Virus record (IMG/VR): IMGVR_UViG_3300032323_001214
Span: 185,607-249,606 of that record
Reading direction: 5' to 3' (one strand)
DNA: 64,000 bases
Shown: piece by piece, positions 16,052-57,742 of the stretch
Numbering within the stretch: the stretch's first letter is position 1
How the letters are laid out: each line of letters starts with the position of its first letter
The notes under the pieces: generated by a model
The model's database searches: none
Told to the model about the DNA's origin: nothing
What the model saw: only the letters and a program-made list of their open reading frames with translations
Made by a program: the position numbers and the translations under genes

Positions 16052-16672
16052 ATGAAGAGCCTAAAACAATACATTGCAGAAAGTGTACATACTTACAATT
16101 ACACTATCAAAATTGCTGGTGACGTGGATAAGAACTGGTTGGACATGTTTAAGTATAATCTTAACAAGTTTGATCCTATACGTATCAGTGAGCCTACAAA
16201 AACACCTATTCAAAAAGATCCATATGGATTTCCTAATTTAGCAAATCAGGCTATAACTATCATTAAGGCAGACTTTCGCTATCCAGCTACAGAGCCAATG
16301 ATTCAGCAGATTGCTCAATTACTAGGTTATAATGTAGATATGGTCAGAGTAATCAGTACAAAGTATGATGACAGTATAAACAGCGAAGTCGAAGGCTATG
16401 CTAATCAAATGAAAAATAGTCCAGTTCTTACACATGAAGAAATGGAAGAACAACCAGGAGCTAAAGAAGCTTCTAAAGCATATGGTGATAGTTATTTGAA
16501 TAGTATTAAGGATCAAACTAAAGATAGTAAGATCAATATTCCTTATGAAGCCAAGAAGACTCCGGATGCGTTTGACCCCTTCAAAATCATTCCACAAGAT
16601 CAAGCTGGTGCCAAAAGTCCAATGAGCACTATAATAAGACAGCCTAAGCCTGCAACTGGCGCAAGTAAATAA
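16052..16672 (+). CDS. Putative head internal protein (MKSLKQYIAE leader)
   Basis: N-terminus resembles T4 capsid-targeting sequence MKTYQEFIAE; late box at 16025-16032. Confidence 0.6.
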   Translation: MKSLKQYIAESVHTYNYTIKIAGDVDKNWLDMFKYNLNKFDPIRISEPTKTPIQKDPYGFPNLANQAITIIKADFRYPATEPMIQQIAQLLGYNVDMVRVISTKYDDSINSEVEGYANQMKNSPVLTHEEMEEQPGAKEASKAYGDSYLNSIKDQTKDSKINIPYEAKKTPDAFDPFKIIPQDQAGAKSPMSTIIRQPKPATGASK

Positions 16673-22932: not shown

Positions 22933-23556
22933 ATGGTAACTATAGAATTATTAACAGCAATATGCCCAAAGACAAAACGCTCTATCTTAGAGGGTTATAT
23001 TGAGCCACTAAACACAGTAGCAGAATACTATGAGATGTTTGAGAATCCACGTAGAGTCGCAGGTTTCTTAGCACAGATTGCACACGAAAGCGGTGGCTTT
23101 ACTGCTGTAGTTGAAAATTTAAACTACAGTGCTAAAGGATTACTGGGAACATTTAAAAAATACTTTCCTACAGAAGAACTAGCAAAACAATATGAACGCA
23201 AACCAGAAATGATTGCAAATCGTGTTTATGCCAATCGTATGAAGAATGGTGATGAGAATAGTGGTGATGGATTTAGATTTAGAGGCCGTGGATTAATTCA
23301 ATTGACCGGTCGTGATAACTATACACGTTTTGCAGAAGCATTAGATATGAGTATTGAAGATACTGTAAAATATCTAGAAACACCAAATGGTGCTGTTGCT
23401 AGTGCTGGTTGGTTCTGGGACAACAATAAACTAAATCAGTTCTGTGATAAGGATGATTTTATTACATTAACAAAACGTATTAATGGCGGTACAATTGGTT
23501 TAGCAGATAGACAACATCATTATCACTTGGCATTACAACAATTAGGCGCACACTAA
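22933..23556 (+). CDS. Glycoside hydrolase family 19 lysin
   Basis: FLAQIAHESGG, ENLNYS, GDG.RFRGRGLIQLTGRDNY, TKRINGG. Confidence 0.9.
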   Translation: MVTIELLTAICPKTKRSILEGYIEPLNTVAEYYEMFENPRRVAGFLAQIAHESGGFTAVVENLNYSAKGLLGTFKKYFPTEELAKQYERKPEMIANRVYANRMKNGDENSGDGFRFRGRGLIQLTGRDNYTRFAEALDMSIEDTVKYLETPNGAVASAGWFWDNNKLNQFCDKDDFITLTKRINGGTIGLADRQHHYHLALQQLGAH

Positions 23557-44427: not shown

Positions 44428-44470
44428 TTGAGTAGTATTTTGATAAATACTATATCAAACGGAATTCATT

Positions 44471-45754
44471 ATGAAAATCACACAAATCATCAGCGAAACT
44501 ACTGCGGGCTGTGTTGCTACAGTAGCAATGCCAATGGGCGAAACACAAAAGCGTCCTAAAGTTTCAGGACTAGAGCCAGCGGACAAAGTAATGTTCGGTA
44601 AGTCAAAGAAAAAAGGACCCTATGGAAACAGCCTTAGCGAGGGCAAAATGAAAGACTTGTCTATGGATTTACGAGCAAGCAAAGATGGTTTATCTGATAT
44701 CGACTTTAAAAAGAAGTATGGAAAGACCAAAGAAGAAATGCGTAAATTAATGCAAGATGCACGTAAAGAACAAAAAGTTAATGAAGATGAACTAAGCGAA
44801 CAGGATCTAATACTAGTTCCCGGTCAAGGTCGTAAAATGAAAACTGGTTTCGTGCCACATGGTAAAAGTCGTCTTGACCATGAAGTTGAGATGGCTCGTA
44901 GTGATTTATTCAGTGCCGCACAAAATGCTCAAAAAGTCTATTCGATGATTAAACACACAAGTGAGGAAGAGGGTCTTGAAGGCTGGGTACAAGAAAAGAT
45001 TATCAAAGCCAATGATTACTTAAACACTATCCGTGAATACTTAGAAGGTAAGCAAGTGCAAGGTATGGCGGAAGACATGACACGCAGAGGATTCTTGCGC
45101 GGTCTCGGAGCCGCAGCAGCAGGGGCAGCTGGTATTGGTGCTGCCGGTAATGCTCAAGGTAAAGTGACCTTTGATAAAGACGGTAATCCAATAAAACCAC
45201 CAGACTGGAAGAACTTTCAGGGTTCAGCACCGGCTCAGGGTGCAAAGCCACTACCTGCAGATAATACTGCATCATCAACTGGTTCTGCTTCAGCCTCTTC
45301 TCAGACAGCTAGCGCAGGAAGCTCTCCTAGTTCTGCATCAAGAGCAGCCGCTAATCAAGCCAGTGCCGCGGCAGAAAAGATTAGATATACCAATCCTAAA
45401 TTTAATCAAGAATACGAGCGAATTGAAAAATTCTATCAACAAACTAAATCAAGCATATTGAATAACAAAAGATACAGTCCTAACCCTGATATTGCTAAAC
45501 GACAACACGCTGAATTTGTGAAAATGTTGATAGCAGCAGATACTGAATTTGCTCAAAAGACCAATGAGTTGATGAAAGAATACAGCCGCCTAAAAGAACA
45601 CGGCGTGGCGGAAGGTGCCAAAGTAGATAGAATGATTAAGCACATTACTAAATCTGAAAAGAAATTAGGCAAGAGTAAAGATGAAGCTGAGAACATAGCC
45701 TGGGCGACTGCTAATAAACGTGGCATGTTAGACAACAAGAACAAGAAAGCGTGA
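44471..45754 (+). CDS. Modular putative head polyprotein (MKITQIISE leader)
   Basis: Late box 44442-44449; modules separated by LSE, VNE, GMAE, GVAE. Confidence 0.7.
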   Translation: MKITQIISETTAGCVATVAMPMGETQKRPKVSGLEPADKVMFGKSKKKGPYGNSLSEGKMKDLSMDLRASKDGLSDIDFKKKYGKTKEEMRKLMQDARKEQKVNEDELSEQDLILVPGQGRKMKTGFVPHGKSRLDHEVEMARSDLFSAAQNAQKVYSMIKHTSEEEGLEGWVQEKIIKANDYLNTIREYLEGKQVQGMAEDMTRRGFLRGLGAAAAGAAGIGAAGNAQGKVTFDKDGNPIKPPDWKNFQGSAPAQGAKPLPADNTASSTGSASASSQTASAGSSPSSASRAAANQASAAAEKIRYTNPKFNQEYERIEKFYQQTKSSILNNKRYSPNPDIAKRQHAEFVKMLIAADTEFAQKTNELMKEYSRLKEHGVAEGAKVDRMIKHITKSEKKLGKSKDEAENIAWATANKRGMLDNKNKKA

Positions 45755-47443
45755 TATGAGCAATATTCTAAAAGGTTTAAATGAAAGGTATTTTAGTCGT
45801 GATGATCAAGACCAACAGAATGCCATGGATACACGCCGTAGAAGCGATTTGAGTGGCGAACGAAATGCTGGTCTTAATGAACCAGATGAATTACCTACTA
45901 TACCTCAACAAAGTCGCAATGGCGTTTATGAATACGATGTACCTACTGGTCAAGAAAAAATAGCACAAGAATTAGGATTACAACTGCATAAAGGTCATTG
46001 GTTCTCTCGTGTCCCGGTTCAAAAAGCAAATTTTCAATTTGGTCGTCCTCAATTTCATGAGATTCCAGCAAAAAATGTATATGAAGCAGAACAGGATTAC
46101 GGTCCTGAGTATCAAGATAAAGTAAAGCGTCTAGGTCAGATGGCTAAACAAGGTGAGCGTAAAACTGTTTGGGATCCTGTCAAGCGTGTGTACAAGACTG
46201 TTCCAGTAAATCCAGCTAAACAGCAAGGTGTGGCGGAAGAACAATTAGATGAAAAGTGCTGGGACACTCACAAGCAAGTTGGAATGAAAAACAAGGGCGG
46301 CAGAATGGTGCCTAACTGTGTTCCAAAAGAAAGCGTTGGGGAAGAGCAAGATATTACTGAAGAAAAATGTCCACACTGCGGTGGACCAATGTTCAGTGAA
46401 ATGATTATGAACGAGAAGAAAGATGCTTGCTACTACAAAGTTAAGAGCCGTTATAAAGTATGGCCAAGTGCTTATGCCAGTGGTGCATTAGTTAAGTGTC
46501 GTAAGAGTGGAGCAGACAGTTGGGGCGATGGTGGCAAGAAGAATGAAAGTTCTATACTAGAAGGTATTGAACAAGTAGATGAGAACTTACACAAGTGGTT
46601 CAAAGAGAAGTGGGTTCGTTTTGGTCCCGATGGTAAGATTCGTGGTGACTGTGCTAGAGGTGATGATAGTGAAGGTAAGCCAAAGTGTTTGCCACAAAGT
46701 AAAGCACACAGTCTAGGTAAGAAGGGTCGTGCAAGTGCTGCCTCACGTAAGCGCAGAGAAGATCCTAATCCAGAACGCCACGGTAAAGCAATCAATGTTA
46801 ACACTAAGAAAAAGTCAAATGAAGGTGTGGCGGAAGGCTCTACTTTTCCTGGCTCACTGAGTGGTCGTGAATGGTCAAAAGTTGGTAGACAAATAAAGTC
46901 ATCTCAGGGTCGTGATAGCAGTGTTACAAGTCCACATCAACGAAAAGATTGGTACAATCCAAAAGATCCAAGAAGTAGCAAACAGCAAAAATTGGACTAT
47001 TTAAAATCTATGAAGGCAAAGCAAGGTGTGGCGGAAGACCAACTTGATGAGATTAGTTCTACCACTGCAAAAAATGTATACAACAAGAGAGAACAAGAAC
47101 ACAAAGACCTAATGAACAAGACTTATGGCAATGCTCAAGATCCACAAGTTCGACAAGCTCAACAAAAACTTGCAAAAGCCGCAAAGTCCTATTTCAATCG
47201 TGGTGCCAAAAAAGGCGTAGAGGAAAGTTATGATTTGGACGCCTTCTCCGGGGTCAAGTTTCTTAATCCAGAGACAGGTAAAATGGGATCATTCTACTAT
47301 TGGTCTTCAATGGAAGGTAAGAACGAGGCGTACTCTATGATTACTAATAAAAAATTGGTGCCGGCCCACAATGACGGGACACCAATGACTTGGGATGAAT
47401 ACAAACAGGCTCTAGATGGTGGTAATCAAAGTGTGGCGGAAGA
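45059..47443 (+). repeat. Dispersed in-frame junction repeat, consensus CAAGGTGTGGCGGAAG
   Basis: [GA]TGGCGGAAG at 45065, 45605, 46230, 46827, 47028, 47433; degenerate copies near 41076, 41202, 41400, 46329, 47211. Confidence 0.85.
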
Positions 47444-47576
47444 ACAACTAGACGAAAAGTGGTCAACGAAATATAAAGACAGTATCAACTGTAGTAATCC
47501 TAAAGGATTTAGCCAAAAAGCACATTGTGCTGGTAAACAGAAAAATGAAAGTGCTGTTATGAAAGGTCTTAAATAA
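45756..47576 (+). CDS. Modular putative head polyprotein (MSNILKGLNE leader)
   Basis: About ten short modules (CW...PNCV, CPHCGG, KKDACY...WPSAYASG, LHKWFKEKW, KWS.KYK.SINC) separated by VAE/LDE/VDE. Confidence 0.7.
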   Translation: MSNILKGLNERYFSRDDQDQQNAMDTRRRSDLSGERNAGLNEPDELPTIPQQSRNGVYEYDVPTGQEKIAQELGLQLHKGHWFSRVPVQKANFQFGRPQFHEIPAKNVYEAEQDYGPEYQDKVKRLGQMAKQGERKTVWDPVKRVYKTVPVNPAKQQGVAEEQLDEKCWDTHKQVGMKNKGGRMVPNCVPKESVGEEQDITEEKCPHCGGPMFSEMIMNEKKDACYYKVKSRYKVWPSAYASGALVKCRKSGADSWGDGGKKNESSILEGIEQVDENLHKWFKEKWVRFGPDGKIRGDCARGDDSEGKPKCLPQSKAHSLGKKGRASAASRKRREDPNPERHGKAINVNTKKKSNEGVAEGSTFPGSLSGREWSKVGRQIKSSQGRDSSVTSPHQRKDWYNPKDPRSSKQQKLDYLKSMKAKQGVAEDQLDEISSTTAKNVYNKREQEHKDLMNKTYGNAQDPQVRQAQQKLAKAAKSYFNRGAKKGVEESYDLDAFSGVKFLNPETGKMGSFYYWSSMEGKNEAYSMITNKKLVPAHNDGTPMTWDEYKQALDGGNQSVAEEQLDEKWSTKYKDSINCSNPKGFSQKAHCAGKQKNESAVMKGLK

Positions 47577-48206: not shown

Positions 48207-48641
48207 ATGAAAAAAATTATAACAACAATTATGTTAGCACTCGCAACTACTGCATATGCACAAAAGGCTCCTCAGGGTGTAACATATGACGCAAATATAT
48301 TGAGAGTTAGTGATGGTGACACAATTGTAATCGCAGCTCCATTCTTACCACAACCTTTGAAACCAGAACTAGCTATTCGTATATACGGGGTTGATACTCC
48401 TGAAAAAGGATTTAGAGCAAAATGTCCTGCTGAAGATGCTAAAGGACAAGCTGCAAGTAAATTCACAAAAGATGCAGTAGCAGCCGCACAAAAACGCCAA
48501 GTAATACTATATGCATGGGATAAGTTTGGTGGGCGAGTATTAGGTGATATATTATTAAATGGACAAAGCCTTCGCACTATGTTGATTCAAAATGGATTTG
48601 CACGTGAATATTTTGGTGATGCAAAACAAAGTTGGTGCTAA
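48207..48641 (+). CDS. Thermonuclease (SNase-like) with signal peptide
   Basis: V.DGDT, IRIYGVDTPE, DKFGGRVLG, L..G.AR; N-terminal signal ending AYA. Confidence 0.9.
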   Translation: MKKIITTIMLALATTAYAQKAPQGVTYDANILRVSDGDTIVIAAPFLPQPLKPELAIRIYGVDTPEKGFRAKCPAEDAKGQAASKFTKDAVAAAQKRQVILYAWDKFGGRVLGDILLNGQSLRTMLIQNGFAREYFGDAKQSWC

Positions 48642-48676: not shown

Positions 48677-49252
48677 ATGAGATTTAACGAAATACTATCA
48701 GAATCAGCAGTAAAACAACTAGCAAAAAAATTGCCTAGTTTAGAAAAACACGACTATAATACCATTGATAAACTAATGAAAACAGTAGCTAAACAACATA
48801 GTATCACTGGTAAAGCACTGCATGACCTTTTTGTTAAAAAATATAATAAAACTCCCGACGACTGGATTAAAAATAAATTAGATGAGAGCAACGTTGATAC
48901 AGAATTACAACAGGAAGTTGATAAATTCTGTAAATGGGCATGTAACAAACTATCTATTAAAGACGAACCCCATATTGAGTTGAGTATGGATACTGAAGAA
49001 GCGCAAACTAATCATCATACCGGCGGACACATAATGGGTGATGATAAGATTTGGGTGTATGCTAAAAATCGTAATTTAGTAGATATATTACGCACAGTAT
49101 TTCACGAATTGGTTCATGTTCGTCAGGGCGAACTAGATATGATTAATCCGGGTGATAGTTATCCGGGCAGTCCAATTGAGGTGATGGCTGACGCCTTGGC
49201 TGGTAAATATATCAAAATTTATGGTGAAAAGAACCATCATATCTTTCAATAA
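48677..49252 (+). CDS. Zincin-like metallopeptidase domain protein (MRFNEILSE leader)
   Basis: RTVFHELVHVRQ (HExxH) plus downstream E..A; late box 48644-48651. Confidence 0.7.
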   Translation: MRFNEILSESAVKQLAKKLPSLEKHDYNTIDKLMKTVAKQHSITGKALHDLFVKKYNKTPDDWIKNKLDESNVDTELQQEVDKFCKWACNKLSIKDEPHIELSMDTEEAQTNHHTGGHIMGDDKIWVYAKNRNLVDILRTVFHELVHVRQGELDMINPGDSYPGSPIEVMADALAGKYIKIYGEKNHHIFQ

Positions 49253-56558: not shown

Positions 56559-57742
56559 GAAAATTATATTACATGGGTCTTGAACCCTACAAAGCAAGAT
56601 ATACTCTACAACTGCAAGAGTGGAATGTAGAAGTTTTCAAGCGTAGGAAAATCAAGTATGTAGTTGTACCCGGTGAGACACTAAGTAACGATCAAGCGAT
56701 TGTTACTGGGCAAGTATTAGATGCACATGGTCGTTCATATTTCGGTATGAGTCAAATGATGAATCTAGTTAAGATGATGAAAGCAGGGGAAGTTACCAGT
56801 GAAGATGTTATCTATTTTGAAGACATGTTTCAACCGGGCTTTGAAAGTTTGCCTTATATTCTTAATCAAGTTAGTGAAACACATCGCCCTAAAATATATG
56901 TCCGCTGTCTTGCGCAGTCAATCGATCCTGATGACTTTGTTCACGTTTGGGGGATGGCCAAGTGGATGGGTTCCTACGAGAAGATGGTCTGCGAAGCTGT
57001 TAGCCAGAGTGGTGGTGCGATCCTCGCGACTAATGAAGAAATGGTCATGAACATGAAGATTGCAGGTTGGGATGTACCAATCTACAATATCAGTGGTTTA
57101 GCATTTGGTAAGAGCGAAGTAATGAATAGAGTAAATAAAATTATTCCATTCCATGATCGCAAAAACCGAGTGGTATTTTCAGCACGATGGGATCAAGAAA
57201 AACAACCAGACTTCTATATGGATGTTATTGAGGGCTGGAATAAACGGCACCCAAACAACAATGTAGAATTTTGTATTTGCAGTGGTGCTAAACTACGTAG
57301 CAATAACGACAGTTACATGAAACGCACACATAATCTAGTTGAACGTGATCTATTGCGTATCTATGAGGATCTAGAAAAAGATGACTATTATGATATTGTC
57401 AATAATAGCCGTGTTGTGTTTAACTGTGCTTTACAAGATTGGGTGTCAAACACAGTATCAGAAGCAGATGCTCTTGGATGTAATGTATTGTATCCGGCGT
57501 ATCGTAGCTTCCCTGAAACGTTTGCTAACGATCCGGAAAGATTATACATTCCATGGTCTGTAACAGATGCATTGGATAAACTTGAAAAGTTATTGAAGAA
57601 ACCCCATACTGATATCGGAAAAATAAGTGATTACAACAACGGTACAATTGATCGTATTGTTGATATCCTTCAAGGCAATGGACAGAGTATGTTGAGAATG
57701 TCCACTGACTATAGAAAACATACTCGCAATTCTAAATTTTAA
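56555..57742 (+). CDS. GT-B fold glycosyltransferase
   Basis: ARWDQEKQP and QDWVSNTVSEA.ALGC..L.P...SFPE (GT4-like C-terminal motif). Confidence 0.75.
   Translation: MRKLYYMGLEPYKARYTLQLQEWNVEVFKRRKIKYVVVPGETLSNDQAIVTGQVLDAHGRSYFGMSQMMNLVKMMKAGEVTSEDVIYFEDMFQPGFESLPYILNQVSETHRPKIYVRCLAQSIDPDDFVHVWGMAKWMGSYEKMVCEAVSQSGGAILATNEEMVMNMKIAGWDVPIYNISGLAFGKSEVMNRVNKIIPFHDRKNRVVFSARWDQEKQPDFYMDVIEGWNKRHPNNNVEFCICSGAKLRSNNDSYMKRTHNLVERDLLRIYEDLEKDDYYDIVNNSRVVFNCALQDWVSNTVSEADALGCNVLYPAYRSFPETFANDPERLYIPWSVTDALDKLEKLLKKPHTDIGKISDYNNGTIDRIVDILQGNGQSMLRMSTDYRKHTRNSKF

What the first reader, a model, noticed from the sequence alone, without database searches (positions are those of the whole stretch)
45059..45615. 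Twin-arginine (Tat) signal peptide buried directly behind a predicted cleavage junction
Seen: after GMAE the protein reads D-MTRRGFLRGLGAAAAGAAGIGAAGNAQG. This matches the Tat consensus [ST]RRxFL with a hydrophobic region and an AxG cleavage-like end, and the module is closed by the next repeat (HGVAE, 45599-45613). Established: Tat signals work only at or near an N-terminus. Inference: either prohead cleavage unmasks the signal so the injected module is exported to the periplasm (e.g. superinfection exclusion), or the module is a captured secreted-protein gene, or it is translated from the internal ATG at 45077.
Basis: partly seen in the sequence, partly recalled or inferred. Interest (0 to 1): 0.7.

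Follow-up and report, generated by a model that had tools for sequence, protein, structure and literature searches.

The report
Hidden Tat export signal in phage polyprotein
A giant freshwater phage carries a genuine-looking bacterial export (Tat) signal in the middle of a modular protein, always just after a predicted protease cut site, which suggests that the phage pre-packs proteins that are cut free and then sent to the host's periplasm.

Summary
ORF 44471-45754 (427 aa) reads QGMAE, then DMTRRGFLRGLG, a Gly/Ala-rich core and AQG|K. The module ends at HGVAE (45599-45613).

It is not chance. A six-frame scan of the whole 249.6 kb phage contig with the curated Tat model TIGR01409 gives one hit, this one (22.2 bits, cut-off 16.7).

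The gene belongs to a large family of uncultured jumbo-phage proteins. Each has a short N-terminal leader like the T4 capsid-targeting sequence and a conserved N domain. Then come 0 to n swappable cassettes, each ending in hydrophobic-x-Glu, and a conserved basic tail.

About 30 further RR signals turned up in relatives. All sit 2-5 residues after such a Glu. The cargo differs and includes GH19 and LysM+SLT cell-wall hydrolases. Signal-less copies of this cargo start exactly at the predicted signal-peptidase site. The methionine before RR is not conserved, so internal initiation is not the general mechanism.

The phage encodes a T4-type prohead protease, a class that cuts after Glu.

Best reading (about 0.5, inferred): the precursor is targeted to the capsid, cut at the junction and ejected. 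Host Tat then exports the freed module. No precedent was found in the literature searches. No experiment or proteomic data exist.

The parts
44442..44450 (+). GATAAATAC, a motif like the T4 late promoter, 20 nt upstream of the start codon
   Evidence: ATAAATA is 18-fold enriched in the 60 nt upstream of ORFs in this genome. It precedes this gene and many structural-looking genes, but not the DNA polymerase. That it is a late promoter is inferred from its likeness to T4 TATAAATA.
44471..45754 (+). ORF of 427 aa: a cassette polyprotein (leader, N domain, one cassette, tail)
   Evidence: More than 1276 homologues were found, with 0 to n cassettes between the N domain and the tail.
44471..44497 (+). 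Leader MKITQIISE, resembling the T4 capsid-targeting sequence MKTYQEFIAE
   Evidence: T4 IPII and IPIII N-termini were read from NC_000866. Five ORFs of this genome share the leader pattern. The role of the T4 CTS is described in PMC9026906.
44498..45058 (+). Conserved N domain, helical and flexible, with no known fold
   Evidence: 71% mean column identity among the base forms. AlphaFold confidence is low: pLDDT 54.5, pTM 0.23.
45059..45073 (+). Junction 1, QGMAE (CAAGGTATGGCGGAA): predicted cut after Glu201
   Evidence: Glu is invariant in about 60 sequence variants of the junction.
45074..45160 (+). Tat-type signal peptide, D202 to G230: DMT-RR-GFLRG, a 16-residue Gly/Ala-rich core, A-Q-G
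   Evidence: Alignment A1 of 24 such segments has R, R and L invariant.
45161..45325 (+). Start of the mature part (KVTFDKDGN...) and a Ser/Ala-rich linker, predicted disordered
   Evidence: pLDDT under 50. The signal-less paralogues P0124, P0127 and P0128 begin at the equivalent residue, right after a Glu junction.
45326..45598 (+). Conserved three-helix bundle, function unknown
   Evidence: AlphaFold pLDDT about 90, helices at module residues 84-103, 107-129 and 137-176. No significant fold match.
45599..45613 (+). Junction 2, HGVAE (CACGGCGTGGCGGAA): predicted cut after Glu381
45614..45754 (+). Conserved basic tail (GAKVDRM...NKNKKA) and stop codon
   Evidence: Invariant columns in A3. The tail is present in nearly all family members.
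45756..47576 (+). Adjacent second cassette polyprotein (606 aa) with five Glu junctions
48677..49252 (+). ORF with leader MRFNEILSE and an HExxH motif: an alternative candidate for the processing peptidase

Best explanation
The segment is a real, cleavable Tat-type export signal. It forms the first part of a swappable cargo cassette inside a capsid-targeted polyprotein of a T4-related jumbo phage.

Proposed sequence of events:
1. The 427-aa precursor is made late and taken into the prohead through its 9-residue leader.
2. The T4-type prohead protease cuts after Glu at the leader and at the two junctions (GMAE|D, GVAE|G). This frees a fragment that begins D-M-T-R-R.
3. The fragment is ejected with the DNA into the next host's cytoplasm.
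4. Its now N-terminal twin-arginine signal is recognised by host TatBC. The small three-helix module is exported post-translationally, and signal peptidase I cuts after A-Q-G.

Shown: the sequence features, their conservation, the cassette nature and the presence of the protease gene. Inferred: packaging, cleavage, ejection, export, and what the module does in the periplasm.
For: Signal quality:
- This is the only TIGR01409 hit in the contig, and it is above the cut-off.
- All 24 collected segments hit TIGR01409, and 18 of 24 hit Pfam TAT_signal.
- RR and L are invariant. The motif is [ST]RRGFL[KR]G, against the consensus S-R-R-x-F-L-K (PMC7317946).
- The core is Gly/Ala-rich (mean Kyte-Doolittle about 1.3, my calculation).
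- AxA or AxG sites lie 20-28 residues after RR, mostly followed by K or R.

Separable element:
- Signal-less paralogues start at the predicted mature N-terminus, right behind a Glu junction.

Position rule:
- All 23 distinct RR signals have a Glu 2-4 residues upstream, within an [LIVM]-x-E context.
- Six more architectures from an independent pattern scan obey it, with Glu up to 5 residues upstream.

Cargo that needs the periplasm:
- GH19 follows the signal in G001, G004, L006, L014, L023 and L027.
- LysM+SLT follows it in L102, L105 and L106.
- G001 and G004 also keep a plain, signal-less GH19 gene, like the one at window 22933-23556.

Protease and targeting:
- Peptidase_S77 scores 97.7 bits in this genome and is present in all four related contigs that are at least 69% complete.
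- gp21-type proteases cut after Glu (PMC5694885, PMC9026906).
- The major capsid protein has LLSE|S where T4 gp23 is cut.
- VAE|G and VAE|S occur in the scaffold protein.
- The leader resembles the T4 CTS.
- A late-promoter-like motif lies upstream.
- The N domain of a sister polyprotein matches a PA5oct protein annotated as virion structural.

Cassette nature:
- P0004 (98% identical) lacks the cassette precisely, and P0002 carries another cassette at the same site.
- A cassette-less allele is seen in run X4.
Against: - There is no direct evidence of cleavage, packaging, ejection or Tat dependence.
- The same three-helix cargo also exists without a signal (P0124, P0127, P0128). Its site of action is therefore not obviously periplasmic.
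- RR is replaced by RD in P0126 and by KK in the G003 GH19 orthologue. Strict Tat dependence is therefore not universal.
- Where the leader is followed directly by the signal (L023, L026, L102), the signal is already near the N-terminus. It could work without any cut in the producing cell.
- Pfam TAT_signal is below its gathering score for this copy.
- The benefit of exporting cell-wall hydrolases just after infection is unclear.
- The host is unknown.
- The AlphaFold-type test with E. coli TatBC gave no answer.
Confidence: 0.5

Rival explanations
1. The module is exported in the producing cell and never passes through the virion. It is either translated on its own from the ATG at 45077, or Tat accepts the uncut precursor with its 200-residue N-terminal extension. 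Signal peptidase then releases the module and tail into the periplasm, for example for lysis control or superinfection exclusion.
For: - An in-frame ATG lies two codons before RR, with a G-rich stretch at -10 to -6.
- M-T-RR looks like a native N-terminus.
- In L023, L026 and L102 the signal is already within 12 residues of the start.
- Internal Tat signals work in actinobacterial Rieske proteins (PMC7317946).
Against: - The residue is L, I or V, encoded by TTA, ATA or GTT, in most relatives.
- There is no canonical Shine-Dalgarno sequence at the right spacing.
- The same junction DNA precedes cassettes that have no start codon.
- The strict placement behind a Glu junction would be unexplained.
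- No precedent is known to me for Tat export behind a large soluble N-terminal domain.
Confidence: 0.2
2. The mechanism is the same unmasking, but the cut is made by a phage zinc metallopeptidase rather than by the prohead protease. The candidate is the HExxH protein with a CTS-like leader at 48677-49252, which is also the first module of some polyproteins. The cut could then occur after delivery, as proposed for the MPTase of polyvalent proteins.
For: - The HExxH ORF with the same kind of leader lies 3 kb downstream.
- It is homologous (E 1e-13) to the first module of the L105 polyprotein.
- It has a weak match to a putative metallopeptidase family.
- The MPTase idea is set out in PMC5512222.
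Against: - An invariant Glu at P1 and variable, small or acidic P1' residues are the signature of gp21-type proteases, not of zincins (PMC5694885; own knowledge for zincins).
- VAE|G/S also occurs in the scaffold protein.
- The peptidase assignment is weak, below all curated cut-offs.
Confidence: 0.15
3. The RR plus Gly/Ala segment is not an export signal. It is a membrane-active or anchoring element of an ejected protein, either a releasable anchor of the SAR type or a segment that inserts into the inner membrane during genome entry.
For: - The Gly/Ala-rich, weakly hydrophobic core resembles SAR domains (own knowledge).
- The muralytic cargo in relatives recalls SAR endolysins and the T7 gp16 transglycosylase.
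- The KK variant in G003 keeps the hydrophobic core.
- Glycine-zipper-like cassettes occur in the same polyproteins.
Against: - Conservation is strongest at exactly the TatC-recognition motif (S/T-RR-G-F-L-K/R), not in the core.
- AxA-type sites and long flexible linkers follow the core.
- Signal-less copies start at the predicted peptidase site.
- The cargo here is not an enzyme.
Confidence: 0.1
4. The signal is a decaying relic of a captured secreted-protein gene. It is carried along passively in a rapidly shuffling cassette and has no present function.
For: - The cassette is dispensable: P0004 lacks it, and a cassette-less allele exists in run X4.
- Variants without RR exist.
Against: - RR, F and L are kept across cassettes whose mature parts are unrelated and only 33-60% identical.
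- The position rule holds in about 30 cases.
- No stand-alone relative of the mature part exists.
Confidence: 0.05

Closest known systems
T4 internal proteins IPI, IPII, IPIII and Alt (capsid-targeting sequence cargo cut by prohead protease gp21)
   Same: - A short N-terminal leader ending in hydrophobic-x-Glu: MKITQIISE here, MKTYQEFIAE in T4.
- A gp21-type protease in the genome.
- Hypervariable cargo.
- Delivery with the DNA, which is established for T4 (PMC9026906, PMC3012670) and inferred here.
   Different: - There is no detectable sequence homology to the T4 IPs.
- Several cargo units are strung in one polypeptide, separated by internal junctions.
- One cargo unit carries a second address, the Tat signal. 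No T4 IP is known to leave the cytoplasm.
Polyvalent proteins of phages and conjugative elements (Iyer, Burroughs, Anand, de Souza, Aravind 2017; PMC5512222)
   Same: - Many unrelated small domains sit in one delivered polypeptide.
- They are proposed to be processed into units with different subcellular targets.
- Lysozyme, ParB-like and metallopeptidase modules occur in relatives (L105).
   Different: - Here the units are separated by a near-invariant junction ending in Glu, conserved even at the DNA level.
- Processing is most likely by the prohead protease.
- The paper mentions no signal peptide, twin-arginine motif or periplasm.
Bipartite presequences of chloroplast lumen proteins (transit peptide followed by a thylakoid Tat signal)
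   Same: The logic is the same. The first address is removed by a processing protease, which exposes a twin-arginine signal, and that signal is removed in turn by a signal peptidase (established knowledge, not tested here).
   Different: This is an analogy only. The organism, the first address (capsid versus chloroplast envelope) and the protease all differ.
Internal Tat signal of actinobacterial Rieske proteins (dual Sec-Tat)
   Same: A twin-arginine signal that is not at the N-terminus of the translation product (PMC7317946).
   Different: There the upstream part is membrane-inserted by Sec and nothing is cut. Here the upstream part is a soluble 200-residue domain and a cut is predicted.
Secreted and SAR endolysins
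   Same: Relatives carry GH19 or SLT enzymes behind a weakly hydrophobic Gly/Ala-rich segment.
   Different: Those signals are N-terminal, Sec-dependent and act in the producing cell. Here the signal is of the Tat type, sits behind a leader or propeptide, and exists alongside an ordinary endolysin.

Membership tests
Tat (twin-arginine) signal peptide | S/T-R-R-x-F-L-K motif | tested here: met
   T-R-R-G-F-L-R at aa 204-210. RR and L are invariant in 24 related segments.
Tat (twin-arginine) signal peptide | Score above the curated threshold of a Tat-signal model | tested here: met
   TIGR01409 gives 22.2-22.9 bits against 16.7. Pfam PF10518 gives 16.9-18.6 against 22.7, so it is not met for this copy, but it is met in homologous copies.
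Tat (twin-arginine) signal peptide | Weakly hydrophobic, Gly-rich h-region followed by an AxA-type signal-peptidase site | tested here: met
   16 residues of G, A, L and I, then A-Q-G|K. Signal-less paralogues begin at the +1 residue. Similar sites occur in most of the 24 segments.
Tat (twin-arginine) signal peptide | Located at the N-terminus of the precursor | tested here: not met
   It starts at residue 202 of 427. It would become N-terminal only after a cut at Glu201, or by initiation at M203.
Tat (twin-arginine) signal peptide | Export depends on TatABC and on the RR pair | not testable with these tools
   This needs a reporter assay. The complex prediction with E. coli TatBC gave no answer.
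T4-type capsid-targeted internal protein | Leader of about 10 residues ending in hydrophobic-x-Glu | tested here: met
   MKITQIISE compared with T4 MKTYQEFIAE. Four more ORFs in the genome share the pattern. This is a resemblance, not a functional test.
T4-type capsid-targeted internal protein | The phage encodes a gp21-type (S77) prohead protease | tested here: met
   PF03420 scores 97.7 bits at G000 57092-57562. It is also found in four related contigs.
T4-type capsid-targeted internal protein | Protein present in virions in a processed form | not testable with these tools
   No cultured relative carries the arrangement, and no proteomic data are available.
T4-type capsid-targeted internal protein | Sequence homology to a known internal protein | tested here: not met
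   tblastn against 50,697 phage records gave no match.
Polyvalent protein (Iyer et al. 2017) | Two to fifteen unrelated domains in one phage polypeptide, with mosaic turnover | tested here: met
   The family carries 0 to more than 6 cassettes between constant ends.
Polyvalent protein (Iyer et al. 2017) | Own processing metallopeptidase domain in the polypeptide | tested here: not met
   This gene has none. An HExxH protein is encoded separately at 48677-49252.
SAR or secreted endolysin | N-terminal signal or anchor directly on a muralytic domain | tested here: not met
   The cargo here is a three-helix bundle with no enzyme match, and the signal is internal. The feature holds only partly, in relatives.

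The most novel reading that the evidence does not exclude
Jumbo T4-related phages use a two-step address label: a capsid-targeting leader, then a protease-unmasked Tat signal. This would let them deliver ready-made proteins, including cell-wall hydrolases, through the virion and the host cytoplasm into the periplasm of the next host within moments of infection. The cargo would be exchanged as cassettes by recombination at a near-invariant 15-nt junction.
Probability: 0.35. Interest if true: 0.85.

Novelty: new variant of a known kind. Interest (0 to 1): 0.75.

Why it matters
If true, phage-delivered proteins are not confined to the cytoplasm. A virion could seed the periplasm of a freshly infected cell with effectors by borrowing the host Tat pathway. 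Tat is the one export route that takes finished, folded proteins, so it suits cargo that is not being translated.

It would add a compartment to the biology of ejected proteins. It would give a rationale for internal Tat signals. It would also suggest a modular design (leader, Glu junction, Tat signal) for delivering proteins to the periplasm with T4-type packaging vectors.

The near-invariant junction DNA points to a cassette-exchange mechanism that may explain the fast turnover of phage cargo genes.

Tried and rejected
- tblastn of the protein against 50,697 cultured-phage records gave no match.
- The GH19 and LysM-SLT relatives match cultured phages only in their catalytic domains, never in the leader or signal. 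No cultured model was found.
- An exhaustive phmmer search with the cassette gave 15 hits. All but the weakest, which was not inspected, are in polyproteins of the same kind. There was no stand-alone bacterial Tat substrate, so a recent capture of a host gene is not supported.
- Fold searches with the three-helix bundle found nothing significant: PDB best E 1.2, AFDB clusters with TM under 0.4.
- The structure of the base protein came out at low confidence (pLDDT 54.5), so it was not searched.
- A complex prediction of the signal with E. coli TatC and TatB returned no answer, which is evidence neither way.
- The phage has no TatA/B/E gene of its own.
- An exact T4 late promoter, TATAAATA, is not enriched in the window. 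The enriched motif is GATAAATA(C/T).
- Literature searches for GVAE junctions, phage polyprotein cargo, Tat signals in virion proteins and Tat endolysins found no precedent. The polyvalent-protein paper does not mention signal peptides.
- The idea that the junction acts as a Shine-Dalgarno sequence for each cassette was rejected, because most cassettes start with Gly and have no start codon.

Full report
**1. Observation**

The window is the last 64 kb of a 249.6 kb IMG/VR virus contig, estimated 67% complete. Its family-B DNA polymerase is closest to those of jumbo phages of Proteobacteria: Phosso, Atu_ph07, RaK2 and CBB. The runs that hold the sequence are freshwater and lake metagenomes.

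- QGMAE ends at 45073.
- It is followed by D-M-T-R-R-G-F-L-R-G-L-G, a 16-residue Gly/Ala-rich core and A-Q-G|K.
- The module ends with HGVAE at 45599-45613.
- The last 46 residues form a basic tail.

A six-frame scan of the whole contig with the curated Tat-signal model TIGR01409 returns this site and no other. The score is 22.2 bits against a cut-off of 16.7, with E 6.4e-5. Pfam TAT_signal is just under its gathering score for this copy.

**2. What the gene is**

A search of 5.8 billion proteins found more than 1276 relatives. Reading them shows a fixed frame. The frame has a 9-residue leader (MKI[NT]QIISE or MRFTEISE), a conserved N domain of about 190 residues, a junction, and a conserved tail (GAKVDRMVKHI...NKNKK).

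The shortest members, about 245 aa, join the N domain directly to the tail. Others carry one to six or more unrelated cassettes between them. Each cassette ends in a junction such as QGVAE, QGMAE, QGIAE, QGVTE or DVKE. Of 114 members that could be measured, 71 carry an insert of more than 30 residues.

Glu is the last residue in all of about 60 sequence variants of the junction, and the third-last residue is usually V, M, I or L.

P0004 is 98% identical in the frame and lacks the cassette precisely. P0002, at 97%, has a different cassette at the same place. In run X4 a contig joins 45074 directly to the sequence that follows 45613, which is the cassette-less allele.

The genome has two more genes of this kind: the adjacent ORF 45756-47576, and G000 153099-155459. 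The N domain of the latter is 27% identical to a protein of Pseudomonas phage PA5oct annotated as virion structural.

**3. The RR segment recurs and obeys a rule**

Eleven of the 120 listed relatives carry an RR segment. So do nine of the 15 hits of an exhaustive phmmer search with the cassette, eight ORFs in 80 related IMG/VR loci, and six further architectures from an independent pattern scan.

In the alignment of 24 segments, R, R and L are invariant. The motif is [ST/DN]-RR-G-F-L-[KRG]-G-[LIM]-G. This is the published consensus S-R-R-x-F-L-K with the Gly-rich, weakly hydrophobic core typical of Tat signals (PMC7317946). All 24 hit TIGR01409 and 18 hit Pfam TAT_signal. Several pass the Pfam gathering score.

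An AxA or AxG site follows 20-28 residues after RR, mostly with K or R next.

Every one of the 23 distinct segments has a Glu 2-4 residues before RR, in contexts such as GVAE, GVDE, SLEE, DVEE, TVLE, FISE and ELGE, which all fit hydrophobic-x-Glu. The only exception in the scan was a hit in a non-coding frame. The cases follow the same rule, with Glu up to 5 residues before RR.

The mature parts behind the signals are unrelated to one another.

**4. The signal is a separable sub-module**

The mature part of this cassette has homologues only inside polyproteins of the same kind (14 of the 15 hits were read). None is a stand-alone bacterial protein.

Three of these homologues (P0124, P0127, P0128) have no signal. 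In them a Glu junction (NVAE, NLTE) abuts R-[VI]-T-F-D-A-N-G-N. That is exactly the residue predicted to follow the signal-peptidase cut (AQG|KVTFDKDGN) in the window.

The model of the cassette shows a disordered signal and linker, followed by a confident three-helix bundle with pLDDT about 90. The bundle has no significant structural match.

**5. Cargo with a known destination**

In related complete genomes (G001 of 352 kb, and G004) and in loci L006, L014, L023 and L027, the architecture is as follows. A leader (MRATEFI[ST]E) comes first, then a variable propeptide, an [LV]-x-E junction, D-[LM]-S-RR-G-F-L-G-G-L-G...A-Q-A|K, and finally a GH19 muralytic domain.

G001 and G004 also keep an ordinary signal-less GH19 gene, orthologous to window 22933-23556. 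The signal-bearing copy is therefore an extra gene in them.

In L102, L105 and L106 the same kind of signal precedes LysM plus an SLT transglycosylase. In L105 this is the last cassette of a 1068-aa polyprotein with QGVAE junctions.

Enzymes that act on peptidoglycan must reach the periplasm. This is independent support that the segment is an export signal.

**6. Who cuts, and where**

The contig encodes a T4-type prohead protease (Peptidase_S77, 97.7 bits) and a gp23-type capsid protein. The protease is present in all four related contigs that are at least 69% complete.

Proteases of this class in T4, phiKZ, 201phi2-1 and SPN3US all cut C-terminal to Glu at short x-X-E motifs (PMC5694885, PMC9026906).

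The capsid protein has LLSE|S where T4 gp23 is cut (the alignment is my reading). V-A-E|G and V-A-E|S occur twice in the gp22-like scaffold and once in the acidic core protein. The genome-wide frequency is 0.37 per 1000 residues.

The leader resembles the T4 capsid-targeting sequence, which I read from the T4 record: IPII and IPIII MKTYQEFIAE|A, IPI MKTFKEF...ITE|A. Five ORFs of this genome have such leaders.

A motif GATAAATAC, close to the T4 late promoter, lies 20 nt upstream of the gene. The core ATAAATA is 18-fold enriched upstream of ORFs.

Taken together, the most economical reading is a capsid-targeted precursor cut by the prohead protease.

A rival cutter exists. ORF 48677-49252 has the same kind of leader and an HExxH motif. 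It is homologous to the first module of the L105 polyprotein. This recalls the MPTase proposed to process polyvalent proteins (PMC5512222).

**7. Internal initiation**

The ATG at 45077 is real. However, the equivalent residue is L, I or V (codons TTA, ATA, GTT) in most relatives. There is no good Shine-Dalgarno sequence at the usual distance. The same junction DNA precedes cassettes that begin with Gly.

Internal initiation cannot be ruled out for this copy, but it is not what is conserved. M-T-RR does suggest that the signal sub-module originated from the N-terminus of a stand-alone exported protein.

**8. Mechanism proposed and its weak points**

The proposed steps are:
1. The precursor enters the prohead through its leader.
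2. The protease cuts after E9, E201 and E381, and perhaps elsewhere.
3. The fragment D202-E381 is ejected with the DNA.
4. Host TatBC recognises its N-terminal signal.
5. The folded three-helix module is exported and trimmed after G230.

Tat is the logical route for a protein that arrives already made.

Weak points:
- Nothing has been observed experimentally.
- The same cargo exists without a signal.
- RR is RD in P0126 and KK in the G003 GH19 orthologue.
- In L023, L026 and L102 the signal follows the leader directly and could work uncut in the producing cell.
- The benefit of exporting wall hydrolases at the start of infection is unclear.

**9. Comparison with what is known**

The system works like T4 internal proteins (leader, gp21 cut, delivery) and like polyvalent proteins (many units in one delivered polypeptide). 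Its addressing logic mirrors the bipartite presequences of chloroplast lumen proteins.

It is not a sequence member of the T4 IP families. It lacks the in-chain metallopeptidase of polyvalent proteins.

Four full-text searches and a reading of the polyvalent-protein paper found no description of Tat or any signal peptide inside phage-delivered cargo.

I rate it a new variant of a known kind.

Noticed in passing
window 45059-45073, 45599-45613, 46224-46241, 46821-46838, 47022-47039, 47427-47444; loci L005-L084: The junction is conserved at the DNA level. 52 of 74 QGVAE junctions in 27 loci are exactly CAAGGTGTGGCGGAA. Val is GTG in 86% (background 10%) and Ala is GCG in 95% (background 8%). Contig joints in metagenome runs fall on these motifs. 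This suggests a short recombination site for cassette exchange.
   Followed up: partly
window 45756-47576: The adjacent 606-aa ORF is a second cassette polyprotein with five Glu junctions. Its Zn-ribbon and DUF5872-like modules are shared with T4-like cyanophages, where some are annotated as structural proteins.
   Followed up: partly
window 48677-49252: A 191-aa ORF with leader MRFNEILSE and an HExxH motif. It is homologous (E 1e-13) to the first module of a 1068-aa polyprotein in L105 and is a possible processing metallopeptidase.
   Followed up: partly
window 48207-48641: A staphylococcal-nuclease homologue with an ordinary N-terminal Sec-type signal (MKKIITTIMLALATTAYA|Q). The same gene follows the Tat-GH19 gene in G001.
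   Followed up: no
window 16052-16672: A 206-aa ORF whose leader, MKSLKQYIAE, is the closest in this genome to the T4 capsid-targeting sequence. It has the GATAAATAC motif upstream and no family match.
   Followed up: no
G000 153099-155459 (outside the window; L002 3100-5460): A third cassette polyprotein (786 aa). Its N domain matches PA5oct 'virion structural protein'. Four Glu junctions lie in the C-terminal 280 residues.
   Followed up: partly
P0057, P0123, P0125 (relatives): Some cassettes are glycine-zipper-like stretches (repeated GGxxGG with small hydrophobic residues) that look membrane-active.
   Followed up: no
L091 763-1956 (G003): The orthologue of the Tat-GH19 gene in a 364-kb complete relative has W-A-K-K instead of S-R-R before the same Gly/Ala-rich core. 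This is a natural RR to KK variant.
   Followed up: no
window 22933-23556: An ordinary signal-less GH19 endolysin. The signal-bearing GH19 found in relatives was not found in this 67%-complete contig.
   Followed up: yes
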